Part shown: positions 29,622 through 34,969 of the stretch, piece after piece
How the letters are laid out: each line of letters opens with the position of its first letter
How positions within the stretch are numbered: position 1 is the first letter of the stretch
Assembly (NCBI GenBank): GCA_020184695.1
Contig: JAANOX010000238.1
Location: forward strand, 503,630-567,629
Direction of reading: 5' to 3'
From: Histomonas meleagridis 2922-C6/04-290x
Lineage: Eukaryota > Protista > Parabasalia
DNA: 64,000 nucleotides
The notes under the pieces: generated by a model
Seen by the model: the letters and a program-made list of their open reading frames with translations, nothing else
Databases searched by the model: none
What the model was told of the DNA's origin: nothing
Translations under genes and position numbers: made by a program

Positions 29622-30410
29622 TCAATTTTGATCAGAAGGATTTTCTGCAAAAAGCCCTTTTGCAGTATTTATTAGCTCAAGAACAAGTTTTCCAATTTTA
29701 CTATCAAATGTTCCCGTGTTTAGGATAACATCAAAGTCGGACTCTGTCAGTGGATCATAAACAAGAACTTTTGCAAGTGACAGAATCGAATCTGCACATT
29801 GTTCAAAAGATTCTTTTGTTTCTTGAATAAAGGTTTCATTTTTGTTCATTTCAACAAAGTTTGAACTGTTTTCCATTTTAATAGTTTCCTCTTTGACTCG
29901 TCTGGAATAATCATGAATTTGAGATCTGAGAGTACTTGTCAACTTTTCCATTTTTTCGCTGTACAGTTCCAACTTCCTTCTTCGCTCATTAATTTTTCTT
30001 TTGTTTTCTGTTTTTAATAATTTAAGTTCTTTTTGAAGGATGTTTCTTTGTGTCTTAAGAGCTTCTAGTTTTTCTGTAGCTTCTGATATTATAATTTTTT
30101 GTGAATCTGATTGAAGAGAAGTTAATGTTGAAACACTATGAGAATCTTTATTCTTTTTTTGTATTATTTTTTCTTCTGAAAAATTATGTGCTTTTTGTGT
30201 TTTTCTTTGTTGAAAACTTTTTTTCATCGAGTCTTTTTTTGTTTGATTATTTGCTAATTTCGGAATTTGATAGTTTCTTTTATGATTTTGATTAACATGT
30301 GAAAAACTATCACTATCAGAAGAAGAATCAAGATTTATTGGTTCGGGTAAGACTGTAAACTTTTTTTGGCCATAATTAAAATTCCAAGCTCCTTTTCCCC
30401 TCATAGACAT
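29622..30410 (-). CDS. Hypothetical coiled-coil protein
   Basis: 262-aa ORF with a Lys/Glu heptad-rich centre. Confidence 0.6.
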   Translation of the reverse strand: MSMRGKGAWNFNYGQKKFTVLPEPINLDSSSDSDSFSHVNQNHKRNYQIPKLANNQTKKDSMKKSFQQRKTQKAHNFSEEKIIQKKNKDSHSVSTLTSLQSDSQKIIISEATEKLEALKTQRNILQKELKLLKTENKRKINERRRKLELYSEKMEKLTSTLRSQIHDYSRRVKEETIKMENSSNFVEMNKNETFIQETKESFEQCADSILSLAKVLVYDPLTESDFDVILNTGTFDSKIGKLVLELINTAKGLFAENPSDQN

Positions 30411-30576
30411 ATTTTAAACGTACATTGTAAATTATTCAAAAATATTTTTTAGCAAAAATCAAACTAAAAAGACAAAAAAATATTAGTTTTTACATTTGAG
30501 TTGTAAAAAATATTCACATTTTTTGTTTTTATGGAATCTACAATAAGTTAGCTTTCTTCAGAAAGGTGTTACTTTA

Positions 30577-31668
30577 ATGACTTTCTATTATGGGTGTGTT
30601 GCGCATGGTGTAAAGATTGTAGCAGAATTTTCTGGAATCCAAGGAAATTTTCGTGAGATTATATATAAAATGTTTCCCAAAATTAATTCATCATATTCAT
30701 ATTCTTCATGGGACCAATACAATTATAATATTTTTTCATTTCTTAATGATGAAATGATGTACATTTGTGTGGTTGACTCTACTGTTGATTTAAAAAAGAA
30801 AACGTTTTTTACATCAGAATTAAAAAGGCAATGGAGAGAAATATATGGAGAAAACGGAAAAGGATTTGAAGAAAATGAAAAAAGTTTGGAATTTGGTATT
30901 AATATTTTTTATTTATTAGAATTTTTTAATGTAGAACATACTGAAAAAGAAACTCAAAATGATAATACTGAATACTTTCCAATTCAAAAAATAGAAAAAC
31001 CTTCCTCATATAATGAAAGACTTATTATATCACATTTAGATGATATTATGAATGAATTTTTTGAACTTAATGAGACAGCACAAACACTTCCACAACAGAA
31101 ATATATTTCTCCTTTTTATTTAATTGGAATCAATACAATATTTATTATATTGATAATTCTTTGTTGCATAGGAGCAAATCTTTTTTCTGTAAAAAAAATT
31201 CATATATCAATGGAAAATAAAGTTCCTTATAATTTTTTGCTTATTGTAACTGCTTTTGCTATTTTAGCATCGCTATTTTTATTTCTTGTGTTATTTATAA
31301 ATGAACCAGTTTTAAAATATTTAACAGTTGGCATCTCTGGATTTTGCATTTTTCTAGAAATTATTATGATATTTATATCTTTTCGTAGTAAGAAAATTAC
31401 GATGAATAATATGAAAGAAAAATGGATTAATGCCAAACTGCCATCAAAAGAAATCGAAAAAACGCTTGAATGTTGTGGTTTTGAAGATCCATATGATAAA
31501 AACATGACACATTTATGCGGTTCACCACATTTTTATCATGTAACATGTATAACCAAAATAGAGCAAACAGTAAACACTCTAACCAGTCACAAAGGGATTG
31601 CGGGAATATTTATCTTAATTCTCAATATTCTTCATTTTGGATATATTATGTATGTGATCACAATATAA
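30577..31668 (+). CDS. Longin domain (VAMP7-like) fused to a tetraspanin
   Basis: aa 1-118 resemble a VAMP7-type longin (Y.CVA.G..IVAEF...GNF..I...M.PKI; YICV.D; F..EL...W...YG; EFG..I..LL..FN). aa 180-363 give three TMs, a large loop with LECCGF plus two more Cys, then a fourth TM. Confidence 0.7.
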   Translation: MTFYYGCVAHGVKIVAEFSGIQGNFREIIYKMFPKINSSYSYSSWDQYNYNIFSFLNDEMMYICVVDSTVDLKKKTFFTSELKRQWREIYGENGKGFEENEKSLEFGINIFYLLEFFNVEHTEKETQNDNTEYFPIQKIEKPSSYNERLIISHLDDIMNEFFELNETAQTLPQQKYISPFYLIGINTIFIILIILCCIGANLFSVKKIHISMENKVPYNFLLIVTAFAILASLFLFLVLFINEPVLKYLTVGISGFCIFLEIIMIFISFRSKKITMNNMKEKWINAKLPSKEIEKTLECCGFEDPYDKNMTHLCGSPHFYHVTCITKIEQTVNTLTSHKGIAGIFILILNILHFGYIMYVITI

Positions 31669-31804
31669 TAATTAAAAAATAAATTGTTATACAATATAAT
31701 AATTAAAAAAAATTAATAGTTCTACAACACAACAATTAAAACAAATATTTCGACATGTTCAGCAAAAAATTCTCAACAAAATTTAATTAATAAAATAAAC
31801 ACAT

Positions 31805-34800
31805 TTACTCTTGTGCATTCACAACCGATATGAATTGCGAGAACGGCAAAAACAAGAAATAATTTCCATATCTAACTTGAAACGTAGCGATATTAATAAT
31901 TCCCGGCCTCATGACGAGTAACTGGAAGTCGAATTCCATTGATTGACCCGAATCGATTTTTTCGCATGTGAATTCTTCCTTACCGATCCAAATCGCATTT
32001 GTGCTTCCAGTTTCTTGAAAGTCGACGTGTGACACGGAAATATCCTTAATCACATTCTTCGTCATGTTTAATACTTTCAGCTTAATATTAACAGTTTCAT
32101 ATCCGACATCTTTAAGCTCAACGAAATCGGGCGAAATGATTTGGAATCGAAATGGATACGATAAAAAGATATCGTTTGGAATCGTATATTGCGAATTGAA
32201 ATCGCAATTTTCTTTTGTGTATGTAAGTGAACCAGATGATTTCATATCATTGATAAAATACTCATCTTGATTATTACAGTCGCATTTATCTGTGTTATGT
32301 TCAAATAGAAAACTACGAAATGTATTCGATGTGATGTAATTGTCAGTTTCTAACATTAATGTATAACATTTGTCCTTAATATGTACTTTATGTAAATGAA
32401 TTGGATCTTCTCTTGTTTGGACATCGACAAAATAAAGTAAATCAAAGGTATTTCGTGGATCTAATAAAATTACATTTTTCATATCTTCGGATTTTTTGCA
32501 ATTTATATGAAATAATTGTGAATATGATCTCCACTGAAAGCCACTATTCGCTATATAAAACCATACAAGATGGATTTCAATATCTTTGTCAGCACCATAT
32601 ACATAACCGCTAACTTCTATCGTATCGTCGGTATCGGTTTGTGGTGTGACCATATTAACAATTGACAAACTTTGTTTGTACGTTTGACCGTTATTAAAAT
32701 ACAAATTTTTTGGTGCGTCATGTACAGCTATAATTGATTTTAAGGGACTTTTTCCTTTACATTTTATACTAAACAAAAACGGCCTAATTTCATTTTGCTT
32801 CATTTCCTTTGGGAAATCTTCAATATCAACTTCTATTAAAGATTGACCTTCAAAAGATTGAAATTCCATTTTCGGGAATTGCGTTGTAACATGTAATAAG
32901 TCCCAAAGAGAAAATGAGATTTTATCAATGGAAAACTTCATTTGTTTTGTAACAACGAAAGAACATAAAACAGTAATTTCATAAACATTTTCTTCTATTT
33001 TTAAATTGACCTCAGAAGTTTTATTCCAATTAACAATTTCTTCATCCAAAGTTTCCATTATTAATTTCATTTTCGATAAATAATATGGCGCAGTACCAAA
33101 GTTCCGATGTAACTTTAATTGTAAATAAACAGGTTCGCCGCATGCGACTTTATTAATTTTGGAGACATTATGAATCCATTTCTTAGTGAATGAAATTTCT
33201 CTTTTTGTTTTATTCCAAAACTCAAAGATCGGTTTAAACTTAATGGAATCGAATCCAAATGATTCAGGTGAACCATATTCGAATAAAGAAGTCGAAGAAA
33301 CGCTCATTATCGGAAGAGATATTTTGGAAACAAATGTACTATCTGAATTAGGCAAATTAAAAGCCTTAAAAAAATCCATAAAATTCTTTTGTTGATTTTC
33401 TTTTGCATCATAAACAAATAAATTCAAATATATTAATGACGCAAAAGATGCGCAATTACATAATATTAAATACTCGGCAACATTTTTTAATGTTTTGATA
33501 ACAATTTGTTTCCATGAAACACTTTGGTAAGTTGAAGGCTCTTTTAAATTTTCGATTTTCCCAATACCACAAACAAATATTTTCTTATGTTTCATGTCAT
33601 TTTCACATATTAAATAATGTATATATGATGAACATCGTAACGCATGTCCATAAAATTTGGCTCTCCCATAAAGTATTGATGATCGATATAAATAAAAAGC
33701 TGCTTTTTTCTTTTGTTCTTTTGTTAAGAATAAACCAGCAATTCTTTCATAACAAACAGCTTTTATAGCATCGCTTATCTTTAATGTTAATAATGTGCAT
33801 AAGAACTTTTCTAATATTGTCACATTTTTGAATGTTAAAAATTGAAATGCTTTAAAAAATAAACATAACGCCGTATCCATATCGTTGTCTTTAATGTACA
33901 TAGTTATTAAATCACATATTAAATGCTCAAACTTCGGATTTAGAAATATTTCATTAACTGGAAAATTACTGATCAGAAGGTGAACGTTAAGCAGCAAAAC
34001 GGTTTTTTCTGCGAAAAAGTTCGGAATGCCCAAAAGTTTACGGACGATTTCAGATGCTTCATAATAATGGCCAACATTTATATATGAAAATGCTAATTGT
34101 AATTGTAATAAATTTATGTTGTGTTGGTGAATTCCTTTCCTAGACTTTTTAAATAAGTTTTGTATAAAAGTGCTTTTTTTAACTTCTAATAAAATCGTTT
34201 CGCCTAATTTGGTAATAAATTTTTGTAATGTGTTTGGAACCTTCTCATTAACAATAGGTAGAATACATTTGTTTTGAAGAAAATCAATTAATTCATCTGA
34301 CAAATAAAACTTTTCTTTCCCTTCGTTTTGGTATAATTTCGAAAATATTGAAAAGAATTGTTCTGATAATTGAGTGCTTCCTTCCAAATTACATGTAAAT
34401 GTTTGATCGCCAGTGGTGAAAACAATGGAATTTTCTGTAAATGCCACATGATAAGTTGTTGTAATTGAGTCCAAATCATAATGTAATAAATCATTAAAAT
34501 GTTGGGTTTGAATTTGTGAAATATATTCATGCGCATCTGTTGTGGAGGAAAAGATAAGGTAATGACATGGGTTGTCGTAAAGTTGAAATGGTGGATTTAA
34601 GCTCCCGAAAAATAAATAGAAAATAGAACGAAACCAAAGAGTGGAATGAAGCATACTTTCGATTCCATATGGGTTTCCTTTCGTTGTGAGAAATTGTTCA
34701 GGAAAACTTTTGGTACGAAATAATTCGTCAGATTTTTCAAGAATTGTTTGAATTTGGGATTCAACGGGTATAATAGTTTCATTATCAATAATTCTATTTA

Positions 34801-34969
34801 AGTTAAGATATTTAAAATTAATTTTAAGCTGATGAATTGATTTTGATGCACATGCAAAAAAATATATTAAGCTGAATTTCCATTTGGATAACTTCTTTTC
34901 TATATCTGGGTCAACGTAAATTGCAATGACTGGTGCGAATTCGTAAAAAAAAAATTTTTGGTTCTTCAT
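31805..34969 (-). CDS. TRAPPC8: TRAPP III subunit TRAPPC8/Trs85-like protein
   Basis: LQLAFSYINVGHYYEA, CYERIA, KKAAFYLYRSSILYGRAKFYGHALRC (compare RK.AF..VLAG.R..KAG...HA.RCY) and GEPV.LQL followed by beta-rich domains; 1054 aa. Confidence 0.55.
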   Translation of the reverse strand: MKNQKFFFYEFAPVIAIYVDPDIEKKLSKWKFSLIYFFACASKSIHQLKINFKYLNLNRIIDNETIIPVESQIQTILEKSDELFRTKSFPEQFLTTKGNPYGIESMLHSTLWFRSIFYLFFGSLNPPFQLYDNPCHYLIFSSTTDAHEYISQIQTQHFNDLLHYDLDSITTTYHVAFTENSIVFTTGDQTFTCNLEGSTQLSEQFFSIFSKLYQNEGKEKFYLSDELIDFLQNKCILPIVNEKVPNTLQKFITKLGETILLEVKKSTFIQNLFKKSRKGIHQHNINLLQLQLAFSYINVGHYYEASEIVRKLLGIPNFFAEKTVLLLNVHLLISNFPVNEIFLNPKFEHLICDLITMYIKDNDMDTALCLFFKAFQFLTFKNVTILEKFLCTLLTLKISDAIKAVCYERIAGLFLTKEQKKKAAFYLYRSSILYGRAKFYGHALRCSSYIHYLICENDMKHKKIFVCGIGKIENLKEPSTYQSVSWKQIVIKTLKNVAEYLILCNCASFASLIYLNLFVYDAKENQQKNFMDFFKAFNLPNSDSTFVSKISLPIMSVSSTSLFEYGSPESFGFDSIKFKPIFEFWNKTKREISFTKKWIHNVSKINKVACGEPVYLQLKLHRNFGTAPYYLSKMKLIMETLDEEIVNWNKTSEVNLKIEENVYEITVLCSFVVTKQMKFSIDKISFSLWDLLHVTTQFPKMEFQSFEGQSLIEVDIEDFPKEMKQNEIRPFLFSIKCKGKSPLKSIIAVHDAPKNLYFNNGQTYKQSLSIVNMVTPQTDTDDTIEVSGYVYGADKDIEIHLVWFYIANSGFQWRSYSQLFHINCKKSEDMKNVILLDPRNTFDLLYFVDVQTREDPIHLHKVHIKDKCYTLMLETDNYITSNTFRSFLFEHNTDKCDCNNQDEYFINDMKSSGSLTYTKENCDFNSQYTIPNDIFLSYPFRFQIISPDFVELKDVGYETVNIKLKVLNMTKNVIKDISVSHVDFQETGSTNAIWIGKEEFTCEKIDSGQSMEFDFQLLVMRPGIINIATFQVRYGNYFLFLPFSQFISVVNAQE

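What the first reader, a model, noticed from the sequence alone, without database searches (positions are those of the whole stretch)
30577..31668. Longin-tetraspanin fusion: a SNARE-type sorting domain on a tetraspanin
Seen: one uninterrupted 363-aa ORF. aa 1-118 look like a VAMP7-type longin, aa 120-175 are a linker with at most a vestigial SNARE-like helix (HLDDIMNE..ELNETAQTL), and aa 180-363 form a complete tetraspanin (TM1-3, large loop with CCG at 299-301 plus Cys314 and Cys324, TM4). The topology is coherent, because a tetraspanin N-terminus is cytosolic, where a longin must act. Known: the VAMP7 longin binds AP-3 and other sorting factors; tetraspanins organise membrane microdomains and mark extracellular vesicles, including in Trichomonas; non-SNARE longins with one TM exist (plant phytolongins). 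I know of no described longin-tetraspanin. Inference: a lineage-specific device coupling coat/adaptor sorting directly to tetraspanin microdomains, for example in endolysosomal or exosome cargo routing.
Basis: partly seen in the sequence, partly recalled or inferred. Interest (0 to 1): 0.8.

Follow-up and report, generated by a model that had tools for sequence, protein, structure and literature searches.

The report
Longin domain fused to a tetraspanin
One intact gene of an AT-rich gut protist, probably a trichomonad-like parasite, joins a cytosolic VAMP7-type "longin" trafficking domain that has lost its SNARE motif to a complete four-pass tetraspanin; I found no other protein with this combination, and its function is untested.

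Summary
Window 30577-31668 (+) is one uninterrupted 363-codon ORF.

- **Longin half (aa 1-118):** it matches solved VAMP7 longin domains (E 3e-8) and protist VAMP7-like proteins (E down to 3e-18).
- **Tetraspanin half (aa 180-363):** it aligns along its whole length with stand-alone tetraspanins. It has four TM helices, CCG plus two more cysteines, TM1 Asn and TM3 Glu. Its model matches only tetraspanins among Swiss-Prot models.
- **Linker (aa 119-179):** it is stop-free (chance about 0.005) and uses codons like a gene in the same frame. No SNARE motif is detectable in it.
- **Junction:** two DNA samples hold it completely.
- **RNA:** low-depth contigs cover the 5' end and the longin-to-linker boundary, but not the tetraspanin half.
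- **Relatives:** none of 53 relatives among 1.84 billion protein representatives spans both halves. No paper found describes the fusion.

The closest precedents are non-SNARE longins: plant phytolongins with one TM, and animal Sec22a/c with several TMs.

My best reading is a real, lineage-restricted fusion in which the longin acts as a built-in cytosolic sorting or regulatory module for a tetraspanin. That function is inferred only. An internal start at Met158 is not excluded.

Verdict: a new variant of a known kind, of moderate interest.

The parts
30577..31668 (+). Whole ORF, 363 aa plus stop: a longin, linker and tetraspanin fusion gene
   Evidence: chance of a stop-free run about 3e-14
30577..30930 (+). 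Longin domain, aa 1-118, VAMP7 type, predicted cytosolic
   Evidence: Matches PDB VAMP7 longins at E 3e-8 and Pfam PF13774 at E 1e-5. phmmer hits reach E 2.8e-18. All residues invariant in relatives are present.
30931..31113 (+). Linker, aa 119-179; acidic, with prolines at 135, 142, 172 and 179; no detectable SNARE motif
   Evidence: A shuffled linker is stop-free in 0.4% of trials. In-frame codon log-odds are +0.61 bits per codon, against -0.64 and -1.11 in the other frames. The R-SNARE HMM scores -1.0, and 241 of 500 shuffles do as well.
31006..31089 (+). Predicted amphipathic helix, aa 144-171, with hydrophobic residues at I150, L154, I157, F161, L164, A168 and L171 in 3-4 spacing
   Evidence: The residues were read from the sequence (one search prints them). 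A low-confidence AF2 model puts a helix at 144-169. That this is a SNARE remnant is not supported.
31114..31173 (+). TM1, about aa 180-199, with the IGxN motif (N186) shared with stand-alone tetraspanins
31174..31236 (+). Small extracellular loop, aa 200-220
31237..31299 (+). TM2, about aa 221-241
31321..31383 (+). TM3, about aa 249-269, with the conserved Glu (E260)
31384..31602 (+). Large extracellular loop, aa 270-342. It carries CCG (nt 31471-31479), C314, C324 and an N-x-T sequon at N309.
   Evidence: E, CCG and both later cysteines are invariant across 12 aligned sequences.
31603..31665 (+). TM4, about aa 343-363. The protein ends at the membrane with no cytosolic C-terminal tail.
30523..30674 (.). 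RNA-library contig over the 5' flank and the first 33 codons (run X1, depth 2.9)
30839..31029 (.). RNA-library contig over aa 88-151, from longin into linker (run X2, depth 2.6). It carries one C>T at 30980 (P135L) and no stop.

Best explanation
This is a real single gene for a chimeric membrane protein.

Architecture:
- The first 118 residues fold as a VAMP7-type longin domain on the cytosolic face.
- A linker of about 60 residues follows. It has lost any recognisable SNARE motif and contains one amphipathic helix.
- The rest is a complete four-pass CCG tetraspanin that ends at TM4 without a C-terminal tail.

Origin (inferred): the 5' part of a protist VAMP7-like R-SNARE gene was joined in frame to a tetraspanin gene. 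Both parents put their N-terminus in the cytosol ahead of a membrane helix, so the topology survived the join.

Mechanism (inferred): the protein cannot drive membrane fusion. The longin most likely acts as a built-in sorting or regulatory handle. It would bind coat, adaptor or SNARE-regulatory partners and so decide where the tetraspanin and its lateral partners travel, for example in endolysosomal or secretory routes. It may take over the role that short cytosolic tails play in ordinary tetraspanins.

Shown here: the reading frame, both domain identities, the lack of a SNARE motif and the lack of known relatives with the same architecture. Inferred: the topology, the origin and the function.
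For: - Intact ORF.
- Longin: PDB VAMP7 at E 3e-8 and Pfam. In a tree its longin sits inside a clade of protist VAMP7-like proteins. It is sister to P0001 (support 100/98) and next to the SNARE-bearing P0003 group (96/86).
- Tetraspanin: Pfam E 3e-7. It aligns along its whole length with 11 stand-alone tetraspanins, with E-CCG, C and C invariant and the TM1 G and TM3 E shared by most. The AF2 model of aa 174-363 has pLDDT 76 and pTM 0.66. Its 30 best Swiss-Prot model matches are all tetraspanins, the best at E 1.7e-4 and TM 0.65. The best PDB matches are CD9, CD53, CD81 and uroplakin. The best Atlas shape match is a tetraspanin cluster.
- Linker is coding: stop-free chance 0.004-0.005 and gene-like codon usage in the shared frame only.
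- The junction stretch 30800-31300 is held at 1.00 of sampled 31-mers by two DNA samples.
- An RNA-library contig runs from aa 88 to aa 151 without a stop, and another covers the start codon. Intergenic DNA on both sides has zero depth.
- Precedents for the function: longin domains carry targeting and auto-inhibitory roles, and VAMP7 carries tetraspanins (CD82) to the plasma membrane in mammals (PMC4501207). Non-SNARE longins exist in plants and animals (PMC2779197, PMC4861013).
Against: - Both Pfam scores are just below the curated cutoffs.
- No RNA contig covers the linker-to-TM1 junction or the tetraspanin half, and expression is several-fold lower than that of the neighbours. The full-length transcript and protein are therefore unproven.
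- No orthologue with the same architecture was found, so conservation of the fusion cannot be shown. The nearest longin relative, P0001, sits on a chimeric contig and says nothing about its own C-terminus.
- The two DNA samples come from one study and may be the source of the assembly, so they are not independent.
- The juxtamembrane cysteines that relatives carry before TM1 and after TM4 are absent. These are possible palmitoylation sites, which might weaken classic tetraspanin-web behaviour.
- No partner binding was tested.
Confidence: 0.6

Rival explanations
1. The ORF is real, but the working product is mainly an ordinary stand-alone tetraspanin. It would be translated from an internal transcript starting at Met158, 22 residues before TM1, which is a normal N-tail length. 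The longin part would then be a rarely used or relict upstream extension.
For: - Met158 would give a 206-aa protein, the size of the stand-alone relatives of 201-251 aa.
- RNA contigs do not connect the longin to the tetraspanin half.
Against: - The longin keeps every residue that is invariant among its relatives.
- The linker has strong in-frame codon usage.
- Transcripts covering the first ATG and the longin-linker boundary exist.
- With no stop in between, any ribosome starting at Met1 must make the fusion.
Confidence: 0.12
2. The longin and linker act as a membrane-tethered regulator of fusion rather than a sorting signal. The amphipathic linker helix would either fold back on the longin, like VAMP7's closed state, or pair with Q-SNAREs as an inhibitory decoy at tetraspanin microdomains.
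For: - The hydrophobic 3-4 pattern at I150...L171 ends 9 residues before TM1, roughly where layers +2 to +8 of an R-SNARE would lie.
- VAMP7 longin is known to bind its own SNARE motif (PMC4501207 introduction).
Against: - An HMM of the relatives' R-SNARE motifs scores the linker no better than shuffles, and there is no Pfam Synaptobrevin match.
- The zero-layer Arg is absent.
- Prolines at 172 and 179 separate the helix from the membrane (sequence).
Confidence: 0.12
3. The gene is a young, selectively neutral or decaying fusion made by a deletion between two neighbouring genes. It would have no function beyond that of its parts.
For: - It is known from a single lineage only.
- RNA depth is low.
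- Both Pfam scores are below the curated cutoffs.
- The cysteines next to the membrane and the C-terminal tail are lost.
Against: - Both halves are far from their nearest relatives, at 41% and about 24-29% identity. Yet they keep all the family-invariant residues and an open frame in a genome where stops arise easily, at 0.083 per random codon.
- That pattern suggests long-term constraint, not recent decay.
Confidence: 0.12
4. The fusion is an assembly or sequencing artefact that joins two separate genes.
For: AT-rich genomes are prone to indel errors, and the DNA samples may be the assembly's own source.
Against: - All sampled 31-mers across 30800-31300 are present in two DNA samples.
- An RNA contig from another study matches 30839-31029 with a single substitution.
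- There is no room for a second TM, a stop, an intergenic spacer and a start in the 183-nt linker, which itself looks coding.
Confidence: 0.03

Closest known systems
VAMP7 / TI-VAMP-type longin R-SNAREs, including a protist radiation of VAMP7-like proteins (P0002, P0003, P0005 and others)
   Same: The N-terminal longin domain is 33-41% identical to the protist members and matches solved human VAMP7 longin at E 3e-8. The N-terminus is cytosolic and is followed by a membrane helix.
   Different: There is no SNARE motif and no zero-layer Arg. The protein has four TM helices instead of one tail anchor, so it cannot act as a fusogenic v-SNARE.
Phytolongins (plant non-SNARE longins, PMC2779197, PMC4861013)
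   Same: Both have a longin domain of VAMP7/VAMP72 ancestry and a non-SNARE middle region, and both are membrane-anchored. In phytolongins the longin serves trafficking and localisation rather than fusion.
   Different: Phytolongins are plant-specific, descend from VAMP72 and have a single C-terminal TM. Here the anchor is a full tetraspanin and the lineage is a protist one.
Mammalian Sec22a / Sec22c (non-SNARE longins; PMC2779197; Yamamoto et al. 2017, cited as ref. 76 in PMC6523435)
   Same: Both have a longin domain, no SNARE motif and several C-terminal transmembrane helices. This is the nearest precedent for the overall layout.
   Different: - Their longin is of Sec22 type. This protein gave no match to any Sec22 chain in the PDB sequence search at E up to 10, only to VAMP7.
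- From memory, not tested here: their TM region is not a tetraspanin and has no large CCG loop.
Stand-alone tetraspanins of protists and fungi (P0015, P0017, P0034, P0038, P0045, P0025; Dictyostelium tspA-E; Trichomonas TvTSPs, PMC3708881)
   Same: Four TMs, a short EC1, a large EC2 with CCG plus two cysteines, a polar Asn in TM1 and Glu in TM3, and the same fold by model comparison.
   Different: The stand-alone proteins have N-tails of about 10-40 residues, often with cysteines next to the membrane, and a short C-tail. This protein has a 179-residue folded N-terminal region, lacks those cysteines and has no C-tail.

Membership tests
Tetraspanin (PF00335) | Four transmembrane helices with a short first and a large second extracellular loop | tested here: met
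   The hydropathy segments are at 180-198, 221-241, 249-269 and 343-361. The loops are about 21 and 73 aa. AF2 gives helices at the matching positions.
Tetraspanin (PF00335) | CCG motif plus at least two further cysteines in the large loop | tested here: met
   CCG is at 299-301, with C314 and C324. All four Cys and the Gly are invariant in the alignment with 11 tetraspanins.
Tetraspanin (PF00335) | Conserved polar residues in TM1 (Asn), TM3 (Glu/Gln) and TM4 (Glu/Gln) | tested here: inconclusive
   N186 in TM1 and E260 in TM3 align with those of relatives. In TM4 the aligned position is Asn (N350) where most relatives have Glu.
Tetraspanin (PF00335) | Score at or above Pfam's gathering cutoff | tested here: not met
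   The scores are 29.2 bits (whole protein) and 30.7 bits (C-half) against a cutoff of 32.1. E-values are 9e-7 and 3e-7, covering profile positions 4-219 of 225.
Tetraspanin (PF00335) | Tetraspanin fold | tested here: met
   The model has pLDDT 76. The 30 best Swiss-Prot model matches are all tetraspanins, with TM up to 0.71. PDB matches to CD81, CD53 and uroplakin have TM 0.54-0.65 but weak E-values of 0.16-0.3.
Tetraspanin (PF00335) | Cytosolic cysteines next to the membrane, the palmitoylation sites used in tetraspanin webs | tested here: not met
   There is no Cys within the cytosolic flanks of TM1-TM4. Relatives carry CC or C before TM1 and after TM4. Palmitoylation itself cannot be tested here.
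Longin domain (PF13774), VAMP7 subfamily | Sequence match to the longin profile and to solved VAMP7 longin domains | tested here: met
   Four PDB VAMP7 longin entries match at E 3e-8 to 9e-8 over aa 2-95/107. Pfam gives E 1e-5 and 25.7 bits against a 26.2 cutoff, marginally below. All invariant residues of 11 relatives are present.
Longin domain (PF13774), VAMP7 subfamily | Alpha-beta-alpha sandwich fold | tested here: inconclusive
   The single-sequence AF2 model shows the order strand, helix, strand, strand, helix, helix, but at pLDDT 28-50. No alignment-based model of this half was made.
R-SNARE (longin SNARE such as VAMP7, Sec22b, Ykt6) | SNARE motif of about 60 residues with heptad layers and a zero-layer Arg | tested here: not met
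   There is no PF00957 match at E up to 10. An HMM of 15 relatives' motifs scores -1.0 bits, and 241 of 500 shuffles do as well. Tyr or Ser stands where the zero-layer Arg would fall.
R-SNARE (longin SNARE such as VAMP7, Sec22b, Ykt6) | Single C-terminal tail anchor or lipid anchor | tested here: not met
   There are four TM helices, and the C-terminus lies at the end of TM4.
Phytolongin | Plant VAMP72-derived longin, non-SNARE PhyL region and a single C-terminal TM | tested here: not met
   The protein has four TMs and a tetraspanin loop. Its longin groups with protist VAMP7-like proteins. No plant sequences were in the tree, so descent from VAMP72 was not tested directly.
Sec22a/Sec22c-type non-SNARE longins | Longin of the Sec22 subfamily followed by several TMs | tested here: not met
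   The 'several TMs' part is met. However, the PDB sequence search returned only VAMP7 longins and no Sec22 chain at E up to 10. Sec22a and Sec22c sequences themselves were not compared.

The most novel reading that the evidence does not exclude
This would be the first tetraspanin with a folded cytosolic trafficking domain. In this reading the fusion hard-wires a link that mammals make between two separate proteins: VAMP7 carrying tetraspanins such as CD82. The longin would recruit adaptor or coat complexes, for example of AP-3 type, directly to tetraspanin microdomains. That would make the microdomain sort itself into endolysosomal, secretory-lysosome or extracellular-vesicle routes of a parabasalid parasite.
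Probability: 0.3. Interest if true: 0.7.

Novelty: new variant of a known kind. Interest (0 to 1): 0.48.

Why it matters
Gene fusions often reveal which proteins work together. A natural longin-tetraspanin chimera would be independent evolutionary support for a functional link between VAMP7-type longin sorting and tetraspanin microdomains, a link reported in mammals between two separate proteins (PMC4501207).

It also extends the small set of non-SNARE longins (phytolongins, Sec22a/c) to a protist lineage and to a new kind of membrane anchor.

It offers a simple experiment: the same tetraspanin with and without its longin, to ask what a longin domain does when freed from a SNARE.

Nothing here shows a role in disease.

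Tried and rejected
- **Word-index homology search with the whole protein:** none of 2882 candidates was significant. With the tetraspanin alignment it returned only two of the alignment's own members.
- **Two metagenome scans** (whole protein; query plus P0001 alignment) found no relative.
- **Full-length alignments for a better whole-protein model:** MAFFT laid the tetraspanins over the longin. I modelled only the C-terminal half with an alignment. The single-sequence full-length model was too poor to use (pLDDT 42).
- **P0001 as an orthologue with extra TMs:** rejected. Its 870-nt contig is a chimera. The antisense strand at 327-506 encodes a bacterial Peptidase_S11 fragment at E 2e-9, so its 'TM' tail is an artefact.
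- **Linker as a vestigial SNARE motif:** not supported statistically. The heptad pattern is only what an amphipathic helix would show.
- **Synteny as a clue to origin:** the P0002 locus has Myb genes and no tetraspanin beside it. The 1005-aa neighbour of P0055 is unrelated to the window's 1054-aa neighbour.
- **Paralogues:** the 64-kb window holds none.
- **Promoter or initiator motifs upstream of Met1, Met158 and Met212:** no usable consensus emerged from 19 genes.
- **VIA-align re-ranking** was dominated by generic helical bundles, so I did not use it as evidence.

Full report
**What is in the sequence.**
Window 30577-31668 (+) is one open reading frame of 363 codons with an ATG start and a TAA stop. 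The window is 71% A+T, and a random codon is a stop with probability 0.083. A stop-free run of this length therefore has chance about 3e-14. The flanks of 166 and 136 nt are 15-20% G+C and full of stops in all frames.

**N-terminal half.**
- phmmer against all PDB chain sequences returns four VAMP7 longin entries (2dmw, 4b93, 2vx8, 4afi) at E 3e-8 to 9e-8, aligned over aa 2-95/107. It returns no other SNARE family.
- Pfam Longin matches aa 32-94 at E 5.8e-5. For the N-half alone E is 1e-5 and the score is 25.7 bits, just under the 26.2 cutoff.
- An exhaustive phmmer search of 1.84 billion representatives gives 53 hits. Forty-six are longin or VAMP7-like proteins, the best at E 2.8e-18 and 41% identity.
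- Every residue that is invariant in an alignment with 11 relatives is present.
- In a maximum-likelihood tree of 50 longin domains, this one is sister to P0001 (support 100/98). Both sit in a clade with the SNARE-bearing P0003 group and P0043 (96/86), within a non-animal VAMP7-like radiation.
- A separate clade of SNARE-less, single-TM longins (P0006, P0041, P0011, P0012, P0013; support 99/94) is not its closest kin.

**C-terminal half.**
- Pfam Tetraspanin matches aa 181-359 against profile positions 4-219 of 225. E is 9e-7 for the whole protein and 3e-7 for the C-half. The scores are 29.2-30.7 bits against a cutoff of 32.1.
- Seven phmmer hits are stand-alone tetraspanins of 201-251 aa, aligned to aa 180-360.
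- Hydropathy gives four TM segments.
- Aligned with 11 tetraspanins, the half lines up through all four TMs. The loop Glu, CCG and the two later cysteines are invariant. The TM1 Ile-Gly is nearly invariant, and the TM1 Asn and TM3 Glu are shared by most.
- An AF2 model of aa 174-363 built on that alignment reaches pLDDT 76 and pTM 0.66.
- Its 30 best matches among Swiss-Prot models are all tetraspanins. The best is Dictyostelium tspC at E 1.7e-4 and TM 0.65.
- Its best PDB matches are CD9, CD53, CD81 and uroplakin, with TM up to 0.65 but weak E-values. Its best Atlas shape match is a tetraspanin cluster.
- There are three differences from the relatives: no cysteines on the cytosolic side of the membrane, no C-terminal tail, and Asn instead of Glu in TM4. 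The large loop carries an N-x-T sequon at N309.

**The linker, and whether the two halves are really one protein.**
- aa 119-179 contain no stop. Shuffles of this stretch are stop-free in 0.4% of trials, and the other five frames have 2-11 stops.
- Scored with codon frequencies from 14 other long ORFs of the window, the linker gets +0.61 bits per codon in the shared frame. The other two frames give -0.64 and -1.11.
- For comparison, 61-codon windows of other genes average 0.42 ± 0.14. Five intergenic stretches are all negative. The linker is therefore coding sequence in the same frame as both domains.
- There is no room for a second gene end, a spacer and a new start.
- All sampled 31-mers of 30800-31300 are held by contigs of two DNA samples. 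These come from one study and are possibly the assembly's own source.
- In four small RNA libraries from another study, the neighbouring genes are covered at depth 4-19 with sharp ends (30347-30367 and 31787). The spacers on either side of this ORF (30426-30496 and 31633-31774) have zero depth.
- This gene is represented by two low-depth contigs. One spans 30523-30674, covering the 5' flank and the first 33 codons. The other spans 30839-31029, covering aa 88-151.
- The second contig carries one substitution, C>T at 30980 (P135L), and no stop.
- Nothing covers the junction with TM1 or the tetraspanin half. The gene is therefore transcribed at a low level from upstream of Met1, but a full-length transcript is not demonstrated. 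An additional internal start at Met158 (nt 31048) or Met212 (nt 31210) is not excluded.

**No SNARE motif.**
MAFFT places the linker opposite the SNARE motif of VAMP7-like relatives. Hydrophobic residues at I150, L154, I157, F161, L164, A168 and L171 follow a 3-4 spacing that ends 9 residues before TM1.

Three results argue against a SNARE remnant. Pfam Synaptobrevin gives no match at E up to 10. An HMM built from the R-SNARE motifs of 15 relatives scores aa 113-178 at -1.0 bits, no better than 241 of 500 shuffles. The zero-layer Arg is absent, and prolines at 135, 142, 172 and 179 break the region up.

The protein is therefore a non-SNARE longin. Whether the helix is a relic of the SNARE motif cannot be decided.

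**Is the architecture known?**
- None of the 53 phmmer hits matches both halves, and each has a single matched stretch.
- The 120 best hits of a profile search all carry Longin plus Synaptobrevin and never Tetraspanin.
- Among the 100 nearest Atlas clusters by features, none carries both families.
- Two metagenome scans found nothing.
- The closest longin relative, P0001, looked like a longin followed by TM helices. Its 870-nt, 1.26x-coverage contig is a chimera: the opposite strand at 327-506 encodes a bacterial Peptidase_S11 fragment at E 2.3e-9, above the cutoff. The tail is therefore meaningless.
- Of 54 papers that hold both words, none of the 20 listed treats a fusion. No paper found in the longin and Trichomonas search treats one either.
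- These searches cannot exclude a very divergent or unsampled example. The window's own protein is absent from the protein collections, so close relatives of this organism may be missing too.

**Closest known things.**
- Plant phytolongins are VAMP72-derived longins without a SNARE motif and with one TM (PMC2779197, PMC4861013).
- Mammalian Sec22a and Sec22c are non-SNARE longins (PMC2779197) with several C-terminal TMs that influence localisation (Yamamoto et al. 2017, cited in PMC6523435).
- New here are the VAMP7-type longin, the protist lineage and an anchor that is a genuine CCG tetraspanin.
- In mammals VAMP7 mediates Golgi-to-surface transport of tetraspanins such as CD82 (PMC4501207). 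A covalent fusion of the two kinds of module is thus biologically sensible.

**How it most likely works (inference).**
A 179-residue folded N-terminal region ahead of TM1 will stay in the cytosol, as in all tetraspanins. The cysteine-rich loop with its sequon faces outside or the lumen. Without a SNARE motif the protein cannot drive fusion.

Longin domains elsewhere bind adaptors and regulators and set localisation. The most economical reading is a tetraspanin with a built-in sorting or regulatory handle. I give this about 0.6, counting the architecture as about 0.85 and the function as much less.

The rivals are:
- an internal-start stand-alone tetraspanin as the main product (0.12);
- a tethered fusion regulator that uses the linker helix (0.12);
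- a neutral or decaying fusion (0.12);
- an artefact (0.03).

**Organism.**
Run names are coded. The base composition (28% G+C), the uninterrupted genes and an Atlas neighbour cluster that is mostly Parabasalia fit a trichomonad-like protist. I did not verify that.

**Verdict.**
This is a new variant of a known kind: a non-SNARE longin, and equally a tetraspanin with an unusual cytosolic domain. So far it is known from one genome, its expression is low, and nothing about its function has been tested.

Noticed in passing
L001:1-870 (ENA metagenome contig carrying P0001): The contig is a chimera. Its + strand at 19 to about 370 encodes a longin domain 41% identical to the query. Its - strand at 327-506 encodes a bacterial D-Ala-D-Ala carboxypeptidase fragment (Peptidase_S11, E 2e-9), followed by a bacterial-looking hairpin terminator. 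The predicted 196-aa protein P0001 is therefore an artefact beyond about aa 115.
   Followed up: yes
P0006, P0041, P0011, P0012, P0013 (Logan assemblies; loci L004, L005 for P0012): These form a well-supported clade (99/94) of non-plant longins. They have no SNARE motif, an acidic Pro-rich middle region with a shared NPFPxQ motif in three of them (P0011, P0012, P0041), and one C-terminal TM. They look like phytolongins outside plants. The query has a similar EYFPIQ at aa 132-137 but is not in this clade.
   Followed up: partly
L006:281-1284 (locus of P0055, in the P0003 group): The nearest SNARE-bearing relatives of the query's longin end at 185 aa, right after the SNARE motif, with no TM. Hydrophobic ORFs lie in other frames just downstream (870-974 and 937-1284). 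The anchor may be reached by a frameshift or a small intron, or may be lost. The same 185-aa form occurs in several samples.
   Followed up: no
window 31805-34969 (-): The downstream neighbour is a 1054-aa protein with a weak match to TRAPPC13_C (E 4e-5, below the cutoff). It may be another membrane-traffic gene beside the fusion. It is well expressed, and its RNA contigs end at 31787.
   Followed up: no
window 29622-30410 (-): RNA-library contigs for the upstream neighbour (262 aa, no Pfam match) stop at 30347-30367 in three runs. That is 43-63 nt short of the ORF's first ATG at 30410. Either coverage fades there or the gene model's start is too far upstream.
   Followed up: no
window 30980: RNA run X2 has C>T here (codon 135, Pro to Leu, inside the FPIQ motif of the linker). 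It is probably a strain difference, and it shows that the RNA study used a different isolate from the assembly.
   Followed up: no
window 30533-30553: A 6-codon upstream ORF (ATG GAA TCT ACA ATA AGT TAG) lies inside the transcribed 5' flank of the fusion gene, out of frame with it.
   Followed up: no
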